Source: Vicugna vicugna (lineage: Eukaryota). From it: a DNA stretch of 64,000 nt. Shown piece by piece: positions 1 through 61,663 of the stretch (positions are counted from its first letter, which is position 1; each line of letters opens with the position of its first letter). The stretch spans positions 868,001-932,000 of the forward strand of contig MU061049.1 in assembly GCA_013265495.1 (NCBI GenBank), in the 5' to 3' direction. The notes under the pieces are model-generated. The model was not told where the DNA came from and ran no database searches. It saw only the letters and a list, made by a program, of their open reading frames with translations. Both the position numbers and the translations under genes were made by a program.

Positions 1-1424
1 ATCTGCCAAGAGGTCTCACCAACTGAGGGGCTGTTAGATGTTCCTGGAATTTTCCGTAAACAGGGTCCAGCCCTGCAGCTGGCCCCGAGGCTCTGGGACC
101 AGAGCTGAGCAGTCAGCTTCCCGCGAACCCCGTGGACCTGCCCCGAGGCTGTGCCGGATGTCCTGGGGGCCTTCAGTGCTCAGTGTTCTGGGGGCCGCAG
201 CCTTTCAGGTCAGCCCTGCCTCCTGGTGGGCCCGTGGGTCAGGAGGCCACCTGGCAGAGGGCCTGGGCAGGAGGGCGGGCTGCCTCGCAGCCCTGCAGGC
301 TGTCTCCTCCCTCTGAGAGCCCAGGGAGGCCCAGGGCTCACCTGATGCTACCCCGGGACTCAGGGCAGGGTCAGGTGGGCTTAGGAAAGGTAGGTGGACC
401 CCCCTGGGCCTCGGGAGGAGCTCCGAGCACAGGGCACCTTCAATGTCCATCCCCTAGAAATGGGGCGAGGCCGAGAACTGGGCCTCTCCTGAGCTGGTAC
501 TGGTGCTTGCAGAGTGGGCCTGGGGTGGTCCTTCCCAGGCCACCAGGGGGACATCTGGCTCTCGCCCTGGGTGCGTCTGGCTGTGCCCCTGCCCTGCATA
601 ACCAGGAGGGAGTGTCCTGCCGGGCTGGCTCTGTCTGTGTGGAGAACTGAATGGTCAAGGCTGTGGGCAGCTCCCCTGGCGAAGCCAGGAGTCCTGGCCC
701 CATCAGGACGCGTGTCCTAGTTTGCCTGATGAGTGGGGGCGAGGGCCCAGCCCTGCCTGTTGTGTGGCCAGTGTGGGGTGGCTATGGGGCCCTTCTCCCA
801 AGTGTCCCTTGTGCTGTCCCCTCCTGTCCCCTGCCCTCCTTTCCTCTGTCATTCCTTCCCTTCCTGCGTGTTCTGCATGACCCGTCCTGTGAACTCACCC
901 TTTGTATTCCTGGCCTCTTCGCTGCCCCTCGCTTTTGCCTCTCCTCCCGTGACCGAGGCGGCCATGTCAGTGCGAGCGCGACTTGGTTATGACTCTGTTT
1001 TCCTTGCTGTTAGACTCATGTCGTTAGGTGAGATCACATCATGTTTTAGTCTCATTAAGACAGCTAAGTCTGGATTCGCACGACAACACGTAATTACCAA
1101 TGATTCACAGGGTAATTGCAAGCTCTCTGTAGGCAATTGTGTCCTCACTCTGTGTGGTTTACAGTGGGAGTCTGCAGGTGTCAGTACTGAGCTGCTGCGT
1201 GAGAAGCAAGCCCGTGGGGGTGGGTTCAGGGCAGAGCGTGGTTTGGGGGTCAGGCTTTTCCCTGGCTGCCCTGGATGGCCCGAAGGGGCTGCACATTTTC
1301 AGAGGCTGGCGCCCATGGCGTAGTTCTGGCAGGGGGCCACGTACAGGGCACAGGGGGCAGTGGGGTGTGGGCGGAGCTCTCACGTGGCAGGTGGCTGGAG
1401 CGTCAGGGCGGCCCCCAGGCCGGG

Positions 1425-1460
1425 GTCACGAGCCTCCATGTCACGAGCCTCCGTGTCACG
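1425..1460 (+). repeat. 15-bp tandem repeat (gtcacgagcctccRt)x2.4 abutting the SLC19A1 exon 3 acceptor
   Basis: Read directly from sequence. Confidence 0.9.
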
Positions 1461-1463
1461 CAG

Positions 1464-2410
1464 GTCACCAACGAGATCACGCCGGTGCTGTCGTACTCCT
1501 ACCTGGCCGTGCTGGTGCCCATCTTCCTGCTGACCGACTACCTGCGCTACAAGCCGGTGCTGCTGCTGCAGGGTCTGAGCTACGTGTCCGTGTGGCTCCT
1601 CCTGCTGTTCGGCTCGTCCGTGCTGCACATGCAGCTCATGGAGCTCTTCTTCAGCATCACCATGGCCGCCCGCATCGCCTACTCCTCCTACGTCTTCTCG
1701 CTCGTGCCCCCCGCCCACTACCAGCGCGTGGCCGGCTACTCGCGGGCCGCGGTGCTGCTCGGCGTCTTCACCAGCTCCGTGCTGGGCCAGCTGCTGGTCA
1801 CCATGGGCCGCGTCCCCTTCTCCACACTCAACTACATCTCGCTGGCCTTCCTCACCTTCAGCCTGGTCCTTGCGCTCTTCCTGAGACGCCCCAAGCGCAG
1901 CCTCTTCTTCAACCGCAGCGCGCCCACCGAGGCCTCGCCCTCCGAGCTGGACCAGATGAACCCGGGCCCCGGCCAGCCCGCGGGCGGCAAGCCCGGGCCC
2001 GCGGCGGCCTGGCGGGACTCGGCCCTTGCGCGCATGGTCCGGGAGCTGGGCCACAACCTGCGGCTGCCGCAGCTGCGCCTCTGGTCCCTCTGGTGGGTCT
2101 TCAACTCCACCGGCTACTACCTCATCGTCTACTACGTGCACATCCTGTGGAACGTGGTCAACCCCACCATGGACTCAACGAGGGTCTACAACGGCGGGGC
2201 CGATGCCACCAGCACAGGTGCCATCACCTCCTTTGCGGCGGGCTTCGTGAAGATCCGCTGGGCGGTGTGGGCGAAGCTGGTCATCGCGGTGGTGACTGTG
2301 GTGCAGGCTGGGCTGGTCTTCCTCATGTACAGGACAGACAGCATCTGGCTGTGCTACATGGCCTTCGTGCTCTTCCGCGGTTCCTACCAGTTCCTGGTGC
2401 CCATCGCCAC
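1464..2410 (+). CDS. SLC19A1: SLC19A1 coding exon 3 fused to exon 4 (VTNEITPVLSYSYLAV...GSYQFLVPIA-T)
   Basis: Acceptor cag at 1461-1463 and donor gtgagt at 2411. Translation matches RFC1 (TDYLRY, MAARIAYSSY, RPKRSLFFNR, LWSLWWVFNS, VYNG, LFRGSYQFLVPIAT). No intron at the usual exon 3/4 position (~2217). Confidence 0.95.
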
Positions 2411-3099
2411 GTGAGTTGGGCGTGCGGGCGGCCATGCGGGTGGCCGTGCGAGGGCCTGGGGCCTGGCCTAGTGCGAGCAGATGGAGGTCGTGTGCTGTGT
2501 GTATCGAGAGGCCTCCTTCCAGAAGGTTCCGGGGGAGCAGCAGGAGCGTGTGCTGGGCAGTGTGGAGCGGCGTCTGGTGTGGTCCCAGTCAGCCGGGAGG
2601 AGCGTGAACCCTGGGCGCCCTTAGCCAGGGAGCCACTTGTCCACAGCACCTCCTGTCCCAGCCACTGTAACCTCACGGCTAGGCAAGGAGCCCAGTCCGT
2701 GTGGATGTCCCCTGTTCTCCCCCCGAGCCACTCACTGTCCACAGGGACCAGACTTCGGGAAGCCCTTCCTCCCAGCCTCCGGGCCCTGCATCTGAGTTCC
2801 CATCTCAGGTAGCCCTGTGGCCATTTTGAGCCTGTCCACTCCCACTCTGGGCATGGTGGCTCATGCCCAGGAGTGACCGGGTGACCCAGCTGGCCTTCTG
2901 CCCAGGGTGGCTCTTCCCCTGGTGCCCTTGCATTCCTCATGCCCCTGGGGGCACTCCTGCACCCACCCAGGGACGTCCCAAGAGCTGCCCGCTGACCTGT
3001 CTGTGCCTTCCAGAACCTTCCTCAGCCCACGTCCAGCTGACTCCTGCCCTCTGTGTGACTCTCTGAACCAGACCTCTCAGAAAGCTGCACACGCATGCT

Positions 3100-3165
3100 T
3101 CACGTGTTCACACCACACGCGTGTGTTTATCCCTCACACGTGTGTTTATCCCTCACACGTGTTCA
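3100..3165. repeat. 19-bp tandem repeat cacacgtgtgtttatccct with three CACGTG E-boxes
   Basis: Full unit at 3135-3153 with partial copies on both sides. Confidence 0.85.
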
Positions 3166-4884
3166 TGTGCAGTCATGGACACAGCATACACGCTCACACT
3201 GCTAGCTCCTGGCAGGTGGCCTGACTCCCTTGTGTTGCCTGGCCTTCCATCCTCCCCTCCTGTCCACCCTTCCCCCGGCTTTCTCAGCCTGTGAATGTCC
3301 TGGGAAAGCACTTCCTTTGGTCGCTCACTCCCCTCTCCTGTCACGTCAGCCTTGTGGGAGGGGCGCCAGGGCCCCAGGTGTTCCACTCCCTTCTCTCAGG
3401 ACCACCTAGTGTCCTGACTCCTGTTAACTGTAAGCACCGTAGGTGTGCGTGGTGGAAAGATCAGACAACGCAGGAAAGGTCAAGTCGGATACAGAAGAGA
3501 TCAAATGGGACACAGAAAGGCGTAAAGAGGACGCGTCCTCCTCAGACCCGGGTCCTGACGCTGACACGCGGGGGTCACTCTGCACCCCTGCCCCGCACGT
3601 AGCCGCGTGGCTCCGTCCGGAGCGCGTGTGTAGTTGGGCCTCTTGGTGATGGACCTGCCCTGATAGTTTCCTAGGACAGACGACACTGAAGCCACTTCCT
3701 CTCACCTACATTTTCCTTCCCAAATTCTGATAATGGCCTCAGGCAGGTCCTAGCAGGTATTGGTGAGGTTAAAGGGCATGCGCTTTAGAAGGAGGGTGGC
3801 AGAGATGTCGCAGGTGCCCGCCCGGCCAGTGCGCAGCCCCGGCGGGTGTCGGAGGGTGGCCAGGGCCAGTTGTCTTTCCCTAGTGACGGCAGGGCTGGCT
3901 CCCCGCTGGTGTCGTGGCCAGTTTGTGTCTGTGGGTTCTTCTTCTGCTGGGATTCCTTTTTTCCCTGTTTATCTGCAGTGTGCTTATCTCCATATGTGAT
4001 AGGAGCTTCTGTCACAGACGTGACCCAGTTACTGTGCCCTCAGTCCCACTTCCGGGCTGGAGGAGCACCATCTGAAACCACCTGTGGGTGGCATGGCGTT
4101 CTGCCTGTGCCGGCGGGACCTGGCCCGGCTCCAGCTTCCCAGCAGTGAATCTGTCGTCGGGGCCCCTGACCCGCTCTCTTCTCACCATCCGTGTGTCTGT
4201 CTGTGACCCTCATCCTGCCTTTTCGTGTATTTCTTGGCCCCCCCCCGCCCTCTCCACCCCAGCAGAAGCTCCTTGGCCTCGGTCGTTCTCTTTAAGGACT
4301 TCCTTGGGTATTTTTGTTCGGTTTTGTTTTCAGAACTTTAGAACATTTCTTGTCCGCTTTGTTTTCTCAGGCACTCTGGGGATTCTAATTCGAAGTATGT
4401 TCAAATGTTAATTTCTTTGCTGAGGACTGGAAGCTCTGAGCATATTAATTCCTCCGGCTTTCCTTCTTTGTTTTCCTGTTCTTTCCCTAATTGACTGAAT
4501 CATTTAACGACCAAGGACTTTGAGTTTTCCTTGTGCTCTGTCTGTGCCTGGGTTCTGCTGGTATCTCGCTCCCACGAGGGTGATTTTCTGAGACCTCTAT
4601 ACTGATTATGACTTACTCCGTCCCACAGTTACTAGAGGACTTTACCCGTCTTCCCAAGGTCGCATTTTGGACTTGGTTTGTGAGTTGTTGTGGGAGAGGT
4701 GCCCAGCTGATCTAGCCAGTCACCTGCAGCCTCAGCAAGCTGGCTGATCACTGGACCACACGGCAGTTCTCGCAGCCACTGGCGGCTCGGGAGTGCCTCT
4801 CCGAGCTGGGTTCCTCTGCGCCTGAGGTCGGTCTTGCCCCTCACTGGGCTGGACCCCTGACCACGGCCTACTCTTCCTGTCCAG

Positions 4885-5026
4885 TTTTCAGATCGCGTCT
4901 TCTCTTTCTCACGAGCTCCGTGCCCTGGTCTTCGGAGTCAACACATTCCTCGCCACCGTTCTCAAGACCATCATCACCCTCATCATCTCGGACAAGCGGG
5001 GCCTGGGCCTCCCGGTCCACTCTCAG
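4885..5026 (+). CDS. SLC19A1: SLC19A1 exon 5 (142 nt; FQIASSLSHELRALVFGVNTFLATVLKTIITLIISDKRGLGLPVHSQ)
   Basis: ccag acceptor and gtgagc donor; phase 2 entry matches the previous exon; the residue equivalent to human K411 is kept. Confidence 0.95.
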
Positions 5027-7049
5027 GTGAGCCCCGGTGTCGGGCTCACTTCCTCCAGGCGGGCAGCCTCTGGGGGGATGTCCTGGCCTGGCCTCTAGGG
5101 GCCCACCCAGCCAGGGGTGTTGCCTCTCCCCGGCACCCAGACCACAAATCTGCTGCAGGCTGGGCATCTCCAGCCGGACCCTCTGGCCTGAGTGGGAGCA
5201 GGAGCAGGAAGGGAGAAGCCCCAAGCAGGGAGGGAAAGGTCAGGGGCAGGGGCCACAATCTGGCTGCTGCAGTGCCGGCCTGTGCGGCTGCTGCCTGGGT
5301 CCAGGCAGGACATGGTCGAGTTCAGTTAGGACGCCGGGGCCTCTGAGGCTGGCCCAGGGCAGGTCCCTCGGCAGGCGTGCTCACTGGCCCTGGGTGTCCC
5401 CCACACGGGCTGGCATCCCGCCGTGCTGCCCCAGCCCATGTCCTCGTGCCAGGCCTCTGCCTGGGATGGGCCCTGGTGCTCGTGACTGCCGTTTGTCTCC
5501 TCTGTGGAGGGCCGGCGAGGGTGGAGCTGGCGAGGCTGGTGTTGGCGTGTGTGGCCCCTTTCCAGGCCCCTCGTCTGACCCTGGGCAGGTTCTCTGCCTT
5601 CTGGAGAGTTTGAGAATTCCTGTCTGCCGTGAGACTGGGGGGCACTCACTGTGTGACTCCGGGTGGCTCCAGCCAAGGCAGGACCTCTCGGAGTGCGCTG
5701 GAATTTGCCAGCGGACAGGCCCACAGCAGGGCGGGGCCCGGACTCCCCAGGGGCCATGCTGCCCCGCCCTCCGCTGTGGGCGCGGCCTCCTCTGCTGGGA
5801 GCCTGGGCCTCACAGGGGCTCAGTCGACCGCGTGGAGAAGTCCTGGCCTCTGTCCAAGGGTCCCTGCCCTGATGGCCCTAAGCTGGCCAGAAGGGGCGTT
5901 CTGAGCAGGAGAGACTCTTGCTTGGAGCCAGCTCCCGGGGCAGGGTTTAGAGGTGCCTTTCAGGGAGAAGCCTTGCAGCCTCTGGCCCTCTGTCCATGCA
6001 GGCAGGCAGGTCCTGGCTCTGCTTCTCCAGGCTCACCGCCCCCAGTCCCCAGGCCGGAACCGGGGAGTGTCCAACCAAGCAGGGTGGGCAGAGCGCCCCG
6101 TGGCCACGTGGGCTCGGGCCACGGTTGCGTGTGCAGCTGCGCCTGTGGGGCAGGGGCTGTCCTGAGGGCACGGCCCTGCTGTCCAGGGACGGTGGGTTGG
6201 AGTCTCCCTCACAGGGGAGAACGTGCCCTGGCCAGTGGGGCCTGGCCTGGCCGCTGTCCGGCACACCAGGGGCCTCCCTTCCCTGGGGCCCCCAGTTGTC
6301 CGGGCTCTGGGCCCTGGGGATCCGAGAGGCCCAGGGCTGGGGAGGGTCTGGAGAGCTCTTCCCCACGGCCTGGGCTTCCTTGCCTCCTGTCCCTGGCCCT
6401 CGCCACATGGCTGCTTCCGGCCACATCAGGTCAGGCTGACGGCAGTAGATTGATTTTTCTCTGGCTGGTTCGGTTTCCCAGTTAAAAGGTAACTCCAGAA
6501 GTTTGTTTGTAGTTGGAAATGCTGGCGGCACCAGAAGGAAGGGTCGTCTCGCTGACCTTCCCTTGTGCAGAGCTGTGCGTGTCCCTGTCCCTCCATCCTC
6601 AGGGGTGAGAACGGGGCAGGTGTTCAGACCTGGCGACTGGTGGGGACTGGGACGGAGCATGTGGGGAACTGGCCTGGGCGGCTAAGCTTTATTTTTGGAT
6701 CATGATAGGCTCACTGGCAGTGTGACCATGGCCACGCCCTGCACTTCCCTGGTGTGAGCACTGCCGTCCCTCCTCCCAGGGCCGCTCAGGCTCCTGTCCG
6801 TGGCCGCACCTGACCCACCCCGCGTCCTCCGGGCCCCGTCTCTGTGGTGGTCTCATCTCAAGTGCGGCGTCCGAGGATCCTGCAGTGGGTGGCTTCGGGG
6901 CTGCCCGTTGCCCGCTCCCCTCGGGGTGCACGGCGCGCGCCCACCCCGTCTCGGTGCTGCCGGGCTGGTTTACCGCTCCCTGCAAACAGCTCTGGGTCGG
7001 GGCTGGGAGGGTAGAGCCGCTCCTCACGCTTGCTTGTGGCTTCTGTGAG

Positions 7050-8162
7050 AGCCTAGGTCTCCGTGCGGCCAGACGCCCGGCGTGCAGGCGCGGGCTCCCA
7101 CGGTGGCTGCCCGTGTTTTCAGGCCCTGCGGACTGTTTTGCAGGGCAGCTGCCCCGTCGCGCACGTTCTCGTCCGTGTTGGGCGTTGTTGGGTTTCTGCT
7201 GAGCAGTTCGGGAAGCTGTGGGGCGATGTTTCCTGTGGTTTTAGTTTGCTGTTTCCTGGGACTTGGGTGAAGTGTTTCTTCACTTCCGTGCCGTTTCCCA
7301 GTTGGGTCCTTTTTTCTCGCGTGACTTTTGTTCCCTGTTTGTGTGTTCCGCATGCGAGTCCTTTGTTGGGTGTGTGGTTTGCAGACGGTTTCTCCCGTCC
7401 GTAGTCGGTCCGTCCTCACGGTCGTCTGTGCAGCAGCTTTAATTTGAGGAGGTCGGAGTTACTCGTTCTCCCTCTTTGGGAGCTCAGTTTTGGTGTCGCA
7501 CTTGGTGACTCTTTGCCTGGCCCCGGGTCCCACACGCTTTCCCTTAGTTTCTCTGCCAAAGTCGTGTAGTGTCACATTTAAGCCTGTGACCGCTTTTAGG
7601 TTCACTTTTGCGCAAGGTGTGAAGTCTGCGTCCGGTTTCATCCTTGGTGGGTGTCCAGTGCCTGCGGCGCCGTCTGTTGAAAAGCCCGGTGCTTTCCCAC
7701 CGCTTGTGCGCGCCTGTTCCTGGCTGCCCACTACCCTGCTCCGCTGAGCGGGGGGCCCGCCCTGTGCCCCCCGGCCCCCCTGCTGGGGGGAGGGGCTCAG
7801 CCCTGAGACCGGGTGCCCGGGTTCTCCAGCTTTTACATTCCTTTTTCAAAATCATCTCAGTTGCTGTCGTTTCTTTGCCTTTTCCTGTAAGTTTTAGAGC
7901 CATCTCGCCTGCAGACTTCCTTGCTGGGGTTTTGCTCGGAACCGCACTGAGCCTGCGTCAGTTTGGGGAGGGTGCTGCGCTGAGTGCCCCAGCCTGTGGC
8001 TGTGGTGTGCCTCTCCACTTGCTCGGAGCCTCCTCGGTTTCTTTCAGCATCTTGTAGTTTTGCATGTGCAAACACTGTAGTGCTGTGCGTGTTTTGTTAG
8101 ATTTATACTTGAGTGTTATTTTTTGAGCAATTGTAAATGGCATGGTTTTAATTTTGAGCTCT
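7050..8162 (-). mobile_element. Ancient L1M ORF2 fragment, GC-shifted
   Basis: Antisense L1 motifs such as gtttgcagacggtttctccc, ctgttgaaaagcccggtgctttccc, gtaagttttagagccatc; boundaries approximate. Confidence 0.7.
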
Positions 8163-8505
8163 GTGTGCTGGAGCTGCCATGACAAAATGCCAGCCTGGGC
8201 GGCTCAAACAGCAGCATTTACTGTCTGACAGTCGGGAGGCTGGAAGTCAGAGGTCAAGGTGTGGGCAGGCCTCGTCCCTCCTGAGAACCTCCTCCTCAGC
8301 ATGCCGGCCGCCGTCCCCTCCCTGTGCCCTCGTGTGGCCTTTCCCTTGTGCGCACGGGCACTCCTGGTGTCTCTCTCTCATAGGGACACCAGTCCTCCCG
8401 GATCAGGTCCCACCCTTATGACATCATTTGACTGCCTGTTTGCAAGCACAGTGGGGGCTGGGGTTCCAGCAGGCTAATTTGAGAGTCACAGTTCAGCTCA
8501 CAACA
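8163..8505 (-). mobile_element. MLT1-family MaLR solo LTR
   Basis: gctgccatgacaaaatgcc...ggaggctggaagtcagaggtcaaggtgtgggcagg...agggacaccagtc...cccaccctt...gttcagctcacaaca. Confidence 0.8.
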
Positions 8506-8532
8506 GTGTCCAAATGCTCACTCTAACGTGTG

Positions 8533-8822
8533 CAGGCCTCACTCTTGCACTGTTTTGCAGACATTGCGTTTTTACAAATTGAAGATTTGTGGCAACGCTG
8601 CATCATCAGATGATGGTTAGCTTTTTTTAGCAATTAAATATTTTTTATTGAAATATGTGCATTGTTTTTAGACGTAATGGTATTGCACACTTAGTAGACT
8701 ATAGAGCAGTGTGCGCACAGCTCTCACGTGCCCCGGGAAACCAGTCTGTGTGCCTTGCTTCATCGCAGCGTCTGCTCTGTCGCCGTGGCCTGGACCTGGG
8801 CCCGCAGCGCCTCTGACGCCTG
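8533..8822 (+). mobile_element. Internally deleted Tigger1 (MITE-like), both termini present
   Basis: 5' ttgcgtttttacaaattgaagatttgtggcaac joined to 3' atcagatgatggttagc...ttgcacacttagtagacta...gggaaacca. Confidence 0.8.
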
Positions 8823-8829
8823 CTTGCGT

Positions 8830-11800
8830 CGGACGTGCTTTGGAGCCTGTGTCTTTTCTCGCATGATCTTGTTGAGGTCACACCGGTCACTTCTAGGAGG
8901 TCTCTTCTGAGTGCCCTTCATGTGTTTTTCTTGCCTGACTGTGCTGGCTCGAACTTCAGTTGTTTCCTTTCCTCTGCTCGCTTTGGATTTGCTCCACTCA
9001 TCTTTTTCTAGCTGAGACCAATGCCTTGCGACGCCGTCCCGTCTGATACGTGTGTTTCGTTGCCGTTCACGTCCCTCCCAGCCTGGCTGAGCTGCAGCCT
9101 CCAGATTTTGATACGCTGCGTTTCACTTCCGCTCACTCAGCGTGTTTTCCCCTCCCTCCACACTTTCTCTTTGGCCTGTGGTGGTTGCGCAGTGGGCTGC
9201 GTGGTTCCAGGTGCTTCCACGTCTCCCTGTGATCCTGCTGTTCCTGACTTCTGCTTTGCGACCAGAGAACAGTCTGTGATTTCAGTCCTTTTCATTTGTG
9301 GGGGTTTGCCTCGGGGCCCAGGATGTGCTCTGTCCTGTTACGTGCTCCGTGGGCACTTGAAGACGGAACCGCTGATGCGGGCGGCATGCCCTGAAGCTGC
9401 TCGGACCCTGCTGCTGGGGGCGCGGTGGTTTGCTCTCTGTCCCCGTGGGTTTTCGTCTGGTCCACTGCTGAGAGGCGGGTACTGACTTTTGCATTTATTG
9501 TCGGGAACTTGTCTGTGTCTCCTTGCAGCTCCGTCACGGTTTTGCTTCGCATTTTCGCAGCTCTGTTTGCTGCGTGCACACGCGGCATTGCCGCGTGCCT
9601 TGCTGGATGGGGCTCTGCCTGCGGGTGTTCCTTCTCTGTGAAATCTGCCTGATGCTAATATAGCCGGTCTGCTCTCCTTTGATTAATGTTTACACGATGG
9701 GTCCTCTTCCATCCTTTCACTTTTAGCCTAACTATATTGTTGTATTTGAAATGAGCTTCTTGCAGACAGCATACGGTCGCCGTGTTTTTTAATCCACTCT
9801 GCTGATCTGTTATATAAGGTTTATTTAGACCACTGATATTTAGTGTGATCGTTAATGTGTTAGAACTTATGTCTGCCGTTTCATTTTTTGTTTTCCCTTT
9901 ATTGCCTCTACTTTTGTTTCTGTGTGTGCGTGCGCGCGTGTATGTGTGTGCGTCTTTCTCTAGGTTATTTACACATTCTTCAGGGTTTCGTTTTGGTTTC
10001 TGCGTTGTGTTTTTGAGTGTATCTCTTGGAATCGCTTTTTTGGTGGTTGCCTTCCGTGTTAAATGGCTAGTTGGAGTGCAGAATTGAGGTCTCACCTTCG
10101 TGTCACTTTCCCCTCCAGGGTTCATAGTCCGAGTGTCTTACTTCCTCCACGTGCCCGTCAGAGCCACCTGAGGTGAGGCTGCAAGCTTTGCTTCAGGATC
10201 ACGCATTTAGGAAACCAGAGAGGTGGGCGTCTGTCTACCAGCAGTTTTACTCACTGTGTTCTTTCTCCTTCCTGATGTTTCAAGCTTCCTTACTATTTTC
10301 TTTCTGTTTAGAACCTCCTGTAGCCATTCTTTTAGGGCAGGCCTGCTGGTGACAAATTGCTCTCTTAGTTTTTCTTCATCTGAGAATGTCCTGATTTATT
10401 TTTAACACCTGAAGGACATTCTCAATGGAATAGGCTTCTGGGTTAACAGTTTTTTCTCTCAACAGTGAAAAATGTGTCATTTCCTTGTGACCTTCCTGGT
10501 TTCTGATGAACAATCCACTGTCATTCTAATTTTTCCCCCTAAGGTGTCATTTTTTTCCAGCTACTTTCAAGATTTTTCCTTTTTCTTCTTCTTTGTGCTT
10601 CGCTTTCAAAATTGGAACATGGTATGTGTTGGTATGCTTTGTTGGGGGAGTTGTCCTGTTTGGGGTTCCTTCAGGTTCTTGACTCTGTGGCGCATGTCTT
10701 TTGCCAAATTTGCAAAGTTCTCAGCCATCTTAGGTACTTTTCAGCCCCCTCCTCTTTCTCTCTTCTTGTTTTACTCCCATGACGCAGTGTTACATCTTGT
10801 ATCATACAGTCCCCTAGAGAATGAGGCTCTTTTTTTTTTTCTTTTCTTTTCTTTTTTTGGTCTGCTTTCTCTCTGTTGTTCAGACTTGGTGATTTCTGTT
10901 GTTCTGTCTTCCAGCTCCATGCTGCTGTTGAGACCGTTTGCTGAGTTTTCATTTCGGTTATTGTATTTTTCAGTTCTAACTTCTCCTTTATCTCTTCTAT
11001 TTTCTGAGATTTTTTTTCATTTGTTTTAAGCGTGTTTGTTATGATCTTTTGAAGTATTTCTATATAGCTACTTTTAAATCATTCTCAGTTACTTTAAAAA
11101 TCTCTGTCACCTTGGAATTGATGTCTGCTGATTGTATTCCATTCACTTAGAGGTCTTTGTGATTCTGACTATGCTGAATGACTTTTTTATTGAAACCTGA
11201 ACATGTTGAGTCCTATGTCACGAGAACCTGTTATGAGGTGTTAATTTCTCTGTCTTACCTGGCTCTTGCTGACACTGCCCTGGTGGAGGGGAGGGGGCAT
11301 GCACCTCGATACAGCCAAGTGGTGGGGACGTCCGGGTCCCCTGCTCCGCCCTCCTCACACTGAGGGGTGGGTGGGGGCTCCTCCTTCCTGCTGGTGGGGA
11401 TGGGAGGTCCAGCCCCCATGTGACCTCCAGTGACACCACTGGGGGGAGGGGCATTCTCACAGCTGCTGCCAGCTGGTGAGAGTCCTGACACTGCCAGGGA
11501 AGGGACACCACCTGGTGGGAGTGGAAGTCCGAGCTCTCCTAGTGGTCTCTGCAGGGGGAGCACTCCGTCTCCCCACCAGGCCGTGACCACCTCTACCTGA
11601 CAGGGGTGGGGGCTTCATTATAGCCTGGGTCGTGAAGGTGGGGTCTGGCTGGAGTAGAGTGGCTCCCGGCTCTCAGTGTCCTGTCCTGCTGGGCGGTGTG
11701 GTCCGTCTCCTGGTCCTTCAGCCAGAAAGAGCTACTTTTGTTGTTTTTCTTCCTGTGTCTGGCATTTCTTGTTTGCTGGCTTCCTTGGGTCCTTTTAAAA

Positions 11801-11995
11801 TACACGCAGCAGAGAGAAAAAAGCCCAGGGAACACAGTGCTGTTGCCTCGGGCTTCCGGGCCCGCGCTGGTCTGCCCCGCCCGCTCTCAGCGTCACCTTC
11901 CCACGTGTGTGCTCTGTGCTCTTACCTGGTTCGGGCATACTTGGGGGAGGAACAGACAAGACGCGCCAGCTGCATCCTCCTGGAAGCAAAGTCCC
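8830..11995 (-). mobile_element. Ancient L1M (L1MC/L1MD-like) ORF2/ORF1/5' fragments
   Basis: T-rich antisense L1 sequence and an old 5'-end motif (aaaaagcccagggaacac...ctggaagcaaagtccc); probably the same element as 7050-8162. Confidence 0.65.
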
Positions 11996-12559
11996 TGATG
12001 GCTCGTTTCCTGGTTTTTCTTTTGAAAATGAACTTTCTTAGAGGGGCCAAGTGTGCCGGTGCGGAGGGGCTCCGGGAGACCACCAGGGAGCAGAGATCTG
12101 GGGCTGTGGGCAGGACTCATGTCCAGTCTGGCCCACAGGCAAGGGAGACCACCCTGGACCCCTGCCCCCAGCGGCCTGAGGACCGGGAGGGACATTCCTG
12201 CGAGCAGCGCTGGTGGGCGGCCTCACTGGTCGGGGTGGACGTGGCTCTGTGCAGGCCGTGGGGCCCCGGCCAGGCGACCTGGGCTGCCTGTCCTCCACCA
12301 GACTGCACTGTGCAGGACGTGCCTGCCTGCGCGGGTGTCCGGGAGGACTTGGCCCCAGAGCAGAGCACACGTTGCTGTCAACAAATTGATCACAGTGCCC
12401 TGGGGCAGATCGCAGAGCACTGGGTGTGCGGACTGCTGAGTGAGGGGACGGGCTGGGCCTGCTCCCGCCCCCGTGACCCCCGGCGCCCAGCCTTGTGTCC
12501 CCGCGGCCATTGAGTGGGGTCTGGTGTGTCCCGCCCTCACTTTGCCCTCTCTGTTCCAG

Positions 12560-12829
12560 TTTCTCGTCTACTTCATGTACTTCCTGGTGCTCTTTGTCGC
12601 CTACTTCTTCGCGGCCGTGCTGGTGGGGCTGCAGCACCTCCGACGGGGCAGCCACCAGCCCCTGCCGCCAGCCCAGGAACTGAGGAGCCCCGTGCAGGAG
12701 AAGGCCGTGCAGGACGGGGCCCTGGGCAGCCTGCAGCCCGGAGCCCGGCCCCTGGCCCCGGAGGATGGCTTGGAGGCCGTGGGGCCGGTCTCCCCAGAGC
12801 AGAGCCAGCAGCCCGAGGCCAAGGCCTGA
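12560..12829 (+). CDS. SLC19A1: SLC19A1 last coding exon (FLVYFMYFLVLFVAYFF...QPEAKA*)
   Basis: Polypyrimidine tract + ccag acceptor, TM12, hydrophilic C-tail, TGA at 12827-12829. Confidence 0.93.
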   Translation, partial: FLVYFMYFLVLFVAYFFAAVLVGLQHLRRGSHQPLPPAQELRSPVQEKAVQDGALGSLQPGARPLAPEDGLEAVGPVSPEQSQQPEAKA

Positions 12830-15716: not shown

Positions 15717-15923
15717 TTTACCTGAACACCGTGCAAATCCACACGTATCTGTGTGTACCCGAGTGCACCTGCACACCTGTGCACACCTGTGTGTACCCGA
15801 GTGCACCTGCACACCCGTACTCCTCCTGTAGGGTTGCCTGGCTGGGCTATCCGGGACAGAGGCTCCCGAGTTTTCGTGACATGAAAACTGCTTGCAAACC
15901 AAGCATCAGGGTAAACAGTCATT

Positions 15924-17426: not shown

Positions 17427-61663
<44,237 letters not shown>

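What the first reader, a model, noticed from the sequence alone, without database searches (positions are those of the whole stretch)
2195..2235. SLC19A1 intron 3 is missing: exons 3 and 4 fused in frame, two TM8 leucines lost
Seen: the sequence reads GCC GAT GCC ACC AGC ACA GGT GCC ATC ACC (ADATSTGAIT) with no intron. Known, from recall: human RFC1 reads ADAAS313TLLG317AIT with a phase-1 intron inside G317. Here 1464-2217 is 754 nt, exactly 6 nt short of the 760-nt exon 3, and the junction keeps an acceptor-like 'cacag|GTGCC'. Inference: a genomic deletion removed the exon 3 end, the donor and almost all of the intron, recruiting the acceptor tail (possibly the whole 'accagcacag') as codons. 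That is imprecise intron loss, unlike clean cDNA-mediated loss. It shortens TM8 by half a helical turn next to the substrate-contacting S313 position and could change folate, methotrexate or cyclic-dinucleotide transport. An assembly collapse of a short GC-rich intron is the main alternative.
Basis: partly seen in the sequence, partly recalled or inferred. Interest (0 to 1): 0.8.

Follow-up and report, generated by a model that had tools for sequence, protein, structure and literature searches.

The report
Missing SLC19A1 intron: probable assembly collapse
In this alpaca-like genome sequence the folate-transporter gene SLC19A1 lacks a tiny, extremely GC-rich intron and two invariant leucines, but the evidence points to a sequence-assembly error, not a real change in the animal.

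Summary
The window is a Lamini (alpaca-type) SLC19A1 locus, and exons 3 and 4 form one open exon (1464-2410) reading GGADATSTGAIT. Every other tetrapod compared reads GGADAASTLLGAIT.

A chromosome-level alpaca assembly and wild Bactrian camel both carry a canonical 70-nt GT-AG intron here, 81-84% GC with a G-quadruplex motif. Dolphin (77 nt) and rhinoceros (70 nt) have it too. The window lacks 76 nt: about 16 nt of exon 3, the donor, and about 60 nt of intron.

I judge it an assembly artefact (about 0.8), for these reasons:
- The junction carries three window-only substitutions within 35 nt.
- A second window-only deletion 5 kb downstream (position 7261, C-rich, intronic) has the same signature.
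- Seven of 37 window-derived substitutions lie within 45 nt of these two junctions (P about 3e-8).
- Apart from the junction, the encoded protein is identical to alpaca's.
- No listed run held more than one of four junction words, and no protein record carries the fused form.

The one read-mapping call failed, so a real private deletion allele (about 0.15) is not excluded. The scan has not noted this locus before. It holds many unverified notes of similar lesions in conserved genes elsewhere in this genome.

The parts
1464..2410 (+). SLC19A1 fused exon '3+4' (947 nt; alpaca has 760 + 193 = 953 nt split by a 70-nt intron)
   Evidence: Translation. PDB and protein hits to the reduced folate transporter. 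Spliced with 4885-5026 and 12560-12829 it gives 452 aa, identical to alpaca isoform X1 except A>T and the LL deletion.
2207..2208 (+). Junction where 76-77 nt present in alpaca and camel are absent (about 16 nt of exon 3, the GT donor, about 60 nt of intron 3)
   Evidence: BLAST break: window 2207 pairs with L001 8358, and window 2209 with L001 8436. Alignments. Intron extracted.
2208..2217 (+). Retained tail of intron 3 (alpaca ccccgcacag; window ACCAGCACAG) read as codons Thr-Ser-Thr-(G)
2177..2211 (+). Cluster of three window-derived substitutions at the junction (2177 C>A synonymous, 2208 G>A or C>A, 2211 C>A)
   Evidence: Three-way alignment polarised with camel.
2218..2410 (+). Exon 4 portion, identical in coding sequence to alpaca
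4885..5026 (+). SLC19A1 exon 5
   Evidence: tblastn; splice sites and translation.
12560..12829 (+). SLC19A1 last coding exon up to the TGA stop
7245..7288 (+). Second window-specific deletion (26-27 nt of a C-rich tract, junction at 7261) in intron 5. Same signature: an A at the junction plus 7245 G>T, 7251 C>G, 7288 C>G.

Best explanation
The gene is the ordinary Lamini orthologue of SLC19A1 (reduced folate carrier). The apparent fusion of exons 3 and 4 is most likely an error of this draft assembly.

The 70-nt intron 3 is 81% GC, and its antisense strand carries a canonical G-quadruplex motif. Such stretches are poorly covered or badly read. Inferred: the consensus or contig ends on either side, built from few error-laden reads, were joined across the unreadable stretch. 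That join dropped 76 nt and left wrong bases within about 30 nt of the join. By chance (1 in 3) the join is in frame, so it looks like a two-residue deletion in TM8.

Shown:
- the absence of the 76 nt relative to alpaca and camel;
- its GC and G4 context;
- the mismatch cluster at the junction;
- a second deletion with the same signature.

Inferred: that these come from the assembly process and not from the animal's DNA.
For: (1) Alpaca GCA_048564905.1 and C. ferus GCA_009834535.1 both have exon 3 ending CTG CTC G, a 70-nt GT-AG intron (81% and 84% GC) and exon 4. Dolphin (77 nt) and rhinoceros (70 nt) share it.

(2) The window is only 0.33-0.39% diverged from alpaca, with symmetric derived changes (37 window-derived, 38 alpaca-derived). 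Yet 7 of the 37 window-derived substitutions lie within 45 nt of two window-specific deletions, against 0.29 expected (Poisson P about 3e-8). Five of those seven are transversions, against 8 of 30 elsewhere (Fisher P = 0.07).

(3) The second deletion at 7261 is intronic, C-rich, and also has an A at the joint. The same process therefore acted where no selection on the protein is involved.

(4) The deleted intron lies in the top 0.4% of 60-nt GC content across the 23 kb compared, and it holds the motif GGGGGCGGCGGGGCGGGCGGGG on the antisense strand.

(5) Outside the junction, the 452 encoded residues are identical to alpaca isoform X1.

(6) The two lost leucines are present in every orthologue aligned, mammals to alligator. 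Positions 311-314 of TMD8 and Ser313 matter for transport (PMC2947195).

(7) Fourteen Lamini DNA runs hold 90-95% of the words of 1200-3200. No listed run holds more than 1 of 4 junction words. No protein record with the fused form exists among the fragments retrieved.

(8) The window has an N gap of estimated size. The three Lamini de novo assemblies of Fan et al. 2020 are short-read SOAPdenovo builds, and the older alpaca drafts mix Sanger, 454, Illumina and low-coverage PacBio (PMC7331169, PMC6598621).

(9) Unverified scan notes list many frameshifting small lesions in conserved genes of this same genome.
Against: The source individual's DNA has therefore not been examined.

The fusion is in frame and stop-free, and it yields T-S-T, close to the ancestral A-S-T. 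A real allele filtered by selection would look like that.

Only one of eight regions with 60-nt GC of at least 85% in the compared 23 kb is affected, so the collapse is not a general rule.

G-quadruplex motifs also cause real genomic deletions.

The k-mer test rests on 4 sampled words, and its listing was dominated by added runs of the same samples.

Which assembly the window comes from is unknown.
Confidence: 0.8

Rival explanations
1. A real germline deletion allele, private to the sequenced animal or segregating in one Lamini lineage. Replication stalling or breakage at the G-quadruplex-forming intron was repaired by end joining. That repair removed 76 nt and left a few mutated bases. Transcripts then read through, giving an RFC with A312T and without L315/L316 in TM8.
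For: In frame with no stop, and a conservative T-S-T outcome. There is a G4 motif in the deleted intron. The rest of the gene is intact and identical to alpaca, so this is not a decaying pseudogene. No read evidence contradicts it, because none could be obtained.
Against: It needs a deletion plus two or three nearby substitutions in a lineage only about 0.2% derived from the common ancestor with alpaca. An identical signature sits at a neutral intronic site 5 kb away. The lost residues are invariant across tetrapods and adjoin Ser313. No listed run or protein record carries the junction.
Confidence: 0.15
2. Intron loss through reverse-transcribed mRNA (a gene conversion by cDNA, or a retrocopy).
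For: An intron is missing while flanking exons are joined in frame.
Against: The removal is imprecise: 16 exonic nt are lost and 10 intronic nt kept. The neighbouring introns (2411-4884, 5027-12559) are retained, and the locus is colinear with alpaca and camel over 22.8 kb, next to COL18A1.
Confidence: 0.01
3. The intronless state is the older state, fixed across Lamini or camelids.
For: None beyond the window itself.
Against: Alpaca (two annotation generations), three Camelus species, dolphin, rhinoceros and alligator all have the intron or the STLLG protein sequence.
Confidence: 0.02

Closest known systems
Alpaca SLC19A1 (XP_072826517 isoform X1; locus on GCA_048564905.1 CM108720.1)
   Same: The DNA is 99.3-99.7% identical over 22.8 kb. 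Exon boundaries match, and the 452 residues from exons 3-6 are identical apart from the junction.
   Different: Alpaca has the 70-nt intron 3 and codes AASTLLG. The window lacks 76 nt and codes ATSTG.
Human reduced folate carrier SLC19A1 (PDB 7XPZ, 7TX6, 8HII and others)
   Same: About 80% identity over exons 3-4, with E = 2e-155. TM8 has the Ser313 region (PMC2947195), Gly307 on TM8, and Ala324/Val327 at the intracellular gate (PMC11965291).
   Different: The window reading would delete the equivalents of L315 and L316 and change A312 to T. That would shift the register between the outer and inner halves of TM8.
Intron loss by genomic deletion (imprecise; described in several eukaryotes; from general knowledge, not tested here)
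   Same: The exon end, the donor and most of a short intron are removed, the residue of the intron is exonised, and the frame is kept.
   Different: Such events are accepted only when supported by reads or several individuals. Here the junction carries error-like mismatches and has no independent support.
Drop-out or collapse of extremely GC-rich, G4-forming sequence in draft vertebrate assemblies (general knowledge)
   Same: The missing segment is 79-81% GC with a G4 motif. There are mismatches at the joint, and the pattern recurs in the same assembly.
   Different: Usually such stretches end as N gaps. Here the flanks were joined without Ns.

Membership tests
SLC19A1 / reduced folate carrier orthologue | Folate_carrier (PF01770) sequence with best matches to vertebrate RFC, not to the thiamine transporters SLC19A2/3 | tested here: met
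   RFC chains score E = 2e-155, against 2e-73 for SLC19A3. The top 120 database hits that carry a source's name are nearly all named reduced folate transporter (a few 'hypothetical protein'), and all have PF01770.
SLC19A1 / reduced folate carrier orthologue | Orthologous position: colinear with the alpaca and camel SLC19A1 locus, tail to tail with COL18A1 | tested here: met
   Endostatin-coding exons lie on the minus strand at about 17.4-18.9 kb.
Real evolutionary intron loss | Intron absent here but present in sister taxa at the same phase-1 position | tested here: met
   This holds for the assembled sequence only.
Real evolutionary intron loss | The junction is seen in independent reads, individuals or transcripts | tested here: inconclusive
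In the junction k-mer query no listed run held more than 1 of 4 words. No fused-form protein turned up. The metagenome scan was empty.
Real evolutionary intron loss | Exact excision, as expected for cDNA-mediated loss | tested here: not met
   16 exonic nt are lost and 10 intronic nt kept.
Assembly collapse artefact | The missing segment is hard to sequence (extreme GC, secondary structure) | tested here: met
   81% GC, G4 motif, and top 0.4% of 60-nt GC content locally.
Assembly collapse artefact | Error-like mismatches concentrated at the joint | tested here: met
   There are 3 window-derived substitutions within 35 nt here. Across both junctions, 7 of 37 lie within 45 nt, P about 3e-8.
Assembly collapse artefact | The same signature recurs at unrelated sites in the same assembly | tested here: met
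   Deletion at 7261. Further leads from other windows are unverified.
Assembly collapse artefact | Raw reads of the assembled animal contain the missing segment | not testable with these tools

The most novel reading that the evidence does not exclude
A South American camelid really carries an SLC19A1 allele in which a G-quadruplex-forming 70-nt intron was lost by an imprecise genomic deletion. Ten intron bases were exonised, yielding a natural RFC variant with TM8 shortened by two invariant leucines next to Ser313.
Probability: 0.13. Interest if true: 0.55.

Novelty: not a real feature. Interest (0 to 1): 0.14.

Why it matters
If real, this would be a rare, datable example of intron loss by genomic deletion in a mammal. 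It would also be a natural two-residue deletion in the substrate-facing TM8 of a transporter for folates, methotrexate and cyclic dinucleotides.

As the evidence stands, its main value is as a warning. This assembly appears to drop short GC-rich segments without leaving Ns. In-frame or frameshifting lesions in conserved genes of this genome should not be read as biology without checking reads.

Tried and rejected
**Read mapping.** No read evidence was obtained.

**Junction k-mer search.** The query 2177-2247 had only 4 sampled words, and the result is weak.

**Locus look-ups.** The look-up of encoding contigs found nothing for the X2 and X4 isoforms. It worked once the longest isoforms were taken from the listing of cluster members.

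**Short-fragment protein search.** A search around the junction returned no camelid fragments in either form.

**Metagenome scan.** An exact scan for the start of exon 4 found nothing.

**Extending the comparison.** I tried to extend the window-versus-alpaca comparison to 23-64 kb through COL18A1. The representative search returned only distant full-length COL18A1 proteins (44-59% identity to the window), so the alpaca COL18A1 locus could not be fetched.

**Hypotheses rejected.**
- Retrocopy or cDNA-mediated loss: neighbouring introns are kept and the junction is imprecise.
- A chimeric join from elsewhere in the window: the 13-mer at the junction recurs only once by chance, near 50984 on the other strand.
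- An AT-rich island at 960-1200 as a deeply conserved element: it is conserved in camel only.

Full report
**What is in the sequence**

Window 1464-2410 (+ strand) is one uninterrupted exon. It opens after gcag| and ends at AC|gtgagt. Its translation matches human reduced folate carrier chains at E = 2e-155 and alpaca RFC at 99% identity.

At 2195-2235 it reads GGADATSTGAIT. The alignment held 17 orthologues, from alpaca, three Camelus species, whales, ruminants, carnivores, human, elephant and wombat to alligator. All of them carry AASTLL here, and all but two dromedary alternative-acceptor isoforms go on with GAIT. The two leucines are missing only in the window.

The stretch 1464-2217 is 754 nt, and alpaca exon 3 is 760 nt. 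The only correction is that the exon ends at 2410.

**What the relatives have**

I fetched the SLC19A1 loci of a chromosome-level alpaca assembly (GCA_048564905.1) and of Camelus ferus (GCA_009834535.1) through their longest annotated isoforms.

| Comparison | Identity to the window | Span |
|---|---|---|
| Alpaca | 99.3-99.7% | 22.8 kb |
| Camel | about 94% | 22.8 kb |

The alignment breaks exactly at window 2207/2209.

Both relatives have exon 3 ending GCC GCC TCC ACT CTG CTC G, followed by a canonical 70-nt GT-AG intron. It is 81% GC in alpaca and 84% in camel, and it ends ...ccccgcacag. Exon 4 follows, starting GT GCC ATC. Dolphin has a 77-nt intron and rhinoceros a 70-nt intron at the same phase-1 position. 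Alligator has about 1.4 kb.

The short GC-rich intron is therefore ancestral for camelids and their relatives, and the window state is derived. Relative to alpaca, the window lacks 76 nt: about 16 nt of exon 3, the donor, and about 60 nt of intron. The last 10 intron bases stand in as codons.

One detail differs. The retained tail would encode Pro-Arg-Thr. In the window it reads ACC AGC ACA (Thr-Ser-Thr) because of two further changes, at 2208 and 2211. A third window-only change lies at 2177. The orthologous Ser codon is TCC, so the AGC here comes from intronic CGC.

**Is it the animal or the assembly?**

A three-way alignment polarised with camel gives 37 window-derived and 38 alpaca-derived substitutions in 22.8 kb. 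That is an ordinary, symmetric divergence of 0.33%.

Against this background there are two window-specific multi-base deletions:
- the 76-nt one at 2208;
- a 26-27-nt one at 7261, in a C-rich tract inside intron 5.

Both have an A at the joint. Both are flanked by window-only substitutions: 2177, 2208 and 2211 at the first, and 7245, 7251, 7261 and 7288 at the second. Seven of the 37 window-derived substitutions thus fall within 45 nt of the two joints, where 0.29 are expected (P about 3e-8). Five of the seven are transversions, against 8 of 30 elsewhere (P = 0.07).

The second site is non-coding, so selection on the transporter cannot explain the shared signature. A process that acts on hard-to-read sequence can.

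The deleted intron lies in the top 0.4% of local 60-nt GC content. Its antisense strand carries a textbook G-quadruplex motif.

Outside the junction, the 452 residues encoded by exons 3-6 are identical to alpaca isoform X1.

The lost leucines sit in TM8 just after Ser313. The literature ties positions 311-314 to substrate binding and transport (PMC2947195). TM8 also links Gly307 to the intracellular-gate residues Ala324 and Val327 (PMC11965291).

**Independent data**

- Fourteen Lamini DNA runs hold 90-95% of the sampled 31-mers of 1200-3200.
- A query restricted to the junction (2177-2247; 4 sampled words) listed no run with more than one word. The holders of that word were other organisms. 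The only word they can share with the window is the intron-tail-plus-exon-4 word, because every other word of the query spans a window-only base.
- Protein searches with the fused exon, and with a 120-aa piece around the junction, returned no record with the fused form and no Lamini fragments at all.
- A metagenome scan was empty.
The decisive test could therefore not be run.

**Context**

The window holds an N gap of 104 bases, which indicates a scaffolded draft. Among published Lamini assemblies, the llama, guanaco and vicuna references are Illumina-only SOAPdenovo builds (PMC7331169). The older alpaca drafts mix Sanger, 454, Illumina and low-coverage PacBio (PMC6598621). I could not determine which assembly the window belongs to.

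The scan's notebook lists many first-reader notes of small frameshifting deletions and duplications in conserved genes of this same genome, among them ZMIZ1, EP400, SIM2, NKD2, DCUN1D2, HDAC4, VENTX and MSX3. These notes are unverified and I treat them only as leads. They agree with an error-prone assembly.

**Verdict**

The most likely explanation (about 0.8) is a collapse of the 70-nt GC-rich intron during assembly. Error-laden flanks were joined, and the join happened to be in frame.

A real deletion allele, private or lineage-restricted and possibly G4-induced, remains possible (about 0.15). No reads were seen, and the in-frame, conservative outcome is what a tolerated allele would look like.

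cDNA-mediated loss and an ancestral intronless state are excluded by three facts: the junction is imprecise, the neighbouring introns are retained, and the intron is present in alpaca and camel.

Nothing else about the gene is unusual.

Noticed in passing
window 7245-7288: A window-specific deletion of 26-27 nt in a C-rich tract of SLC19A1 intron 5. It has an A at the joint and three flanking window-only substitutions. Camel has a tandem duplication in the same tract.
   Followed up: yes
window 2420: A 12-nt difference (CGTGCGGGCGGC) just after the exon 4 donor. It is present in alpaca and absent in both the window and camel, so it is an alpaca-specific tandem insertion.
   Followed up: partly
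window ~17430-64000, minus strand: COL18A1 lies tail to tail with SLC19A1. The endostatin exons are at 17430-17636 and 18735-18932, and N-terminal domain exons at about 51.2-51.7 kb and 60.3-60.6 kb. The only N run (52107-52210) lies inside this gene.
   Followed up: partly
P0042 / P0044 (Camelus dromedarius RefSeq isoforms X3 / X2): These models read ...ASTLLD PLGGVGEAG..., which suggests an alternative acceptor (gtgaag|ATCCGC) inside exon 4. That would shift the frame after TM8. The equivalent site is window 2249/2250.
   Followed up: no
P0026 (older alpaca model XP_031535367): This model lacks about 41 residues inside exon 3 (window about 2000-2125) but keeps AASTLLG. It probably works around a defect in an older alpaca assembly.
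   Followed up: no
L003:15375-15444 (alpaca intron 3): This 70-nt intron is near the lower size limit for mammalian introns. It is 81% GC with a G-quadruplex motif on the antisense strand, and its length is conserved in camel and rhinoceros.
   Followed up: partly
window 15749-15786: A 38-nt unit of a CACACCTGTGCAC-type repeat is present in the window and absent in alpaca. The polarity is ambiguous between the two alignments.
   Followed up: no
window 960-1200: An AT-richer island in the GC-rich intron 2. It is 97% identical to camel, above the ~94% background, but was not found in dolphin, rhinoceros or alligator.
   Followed up: partly
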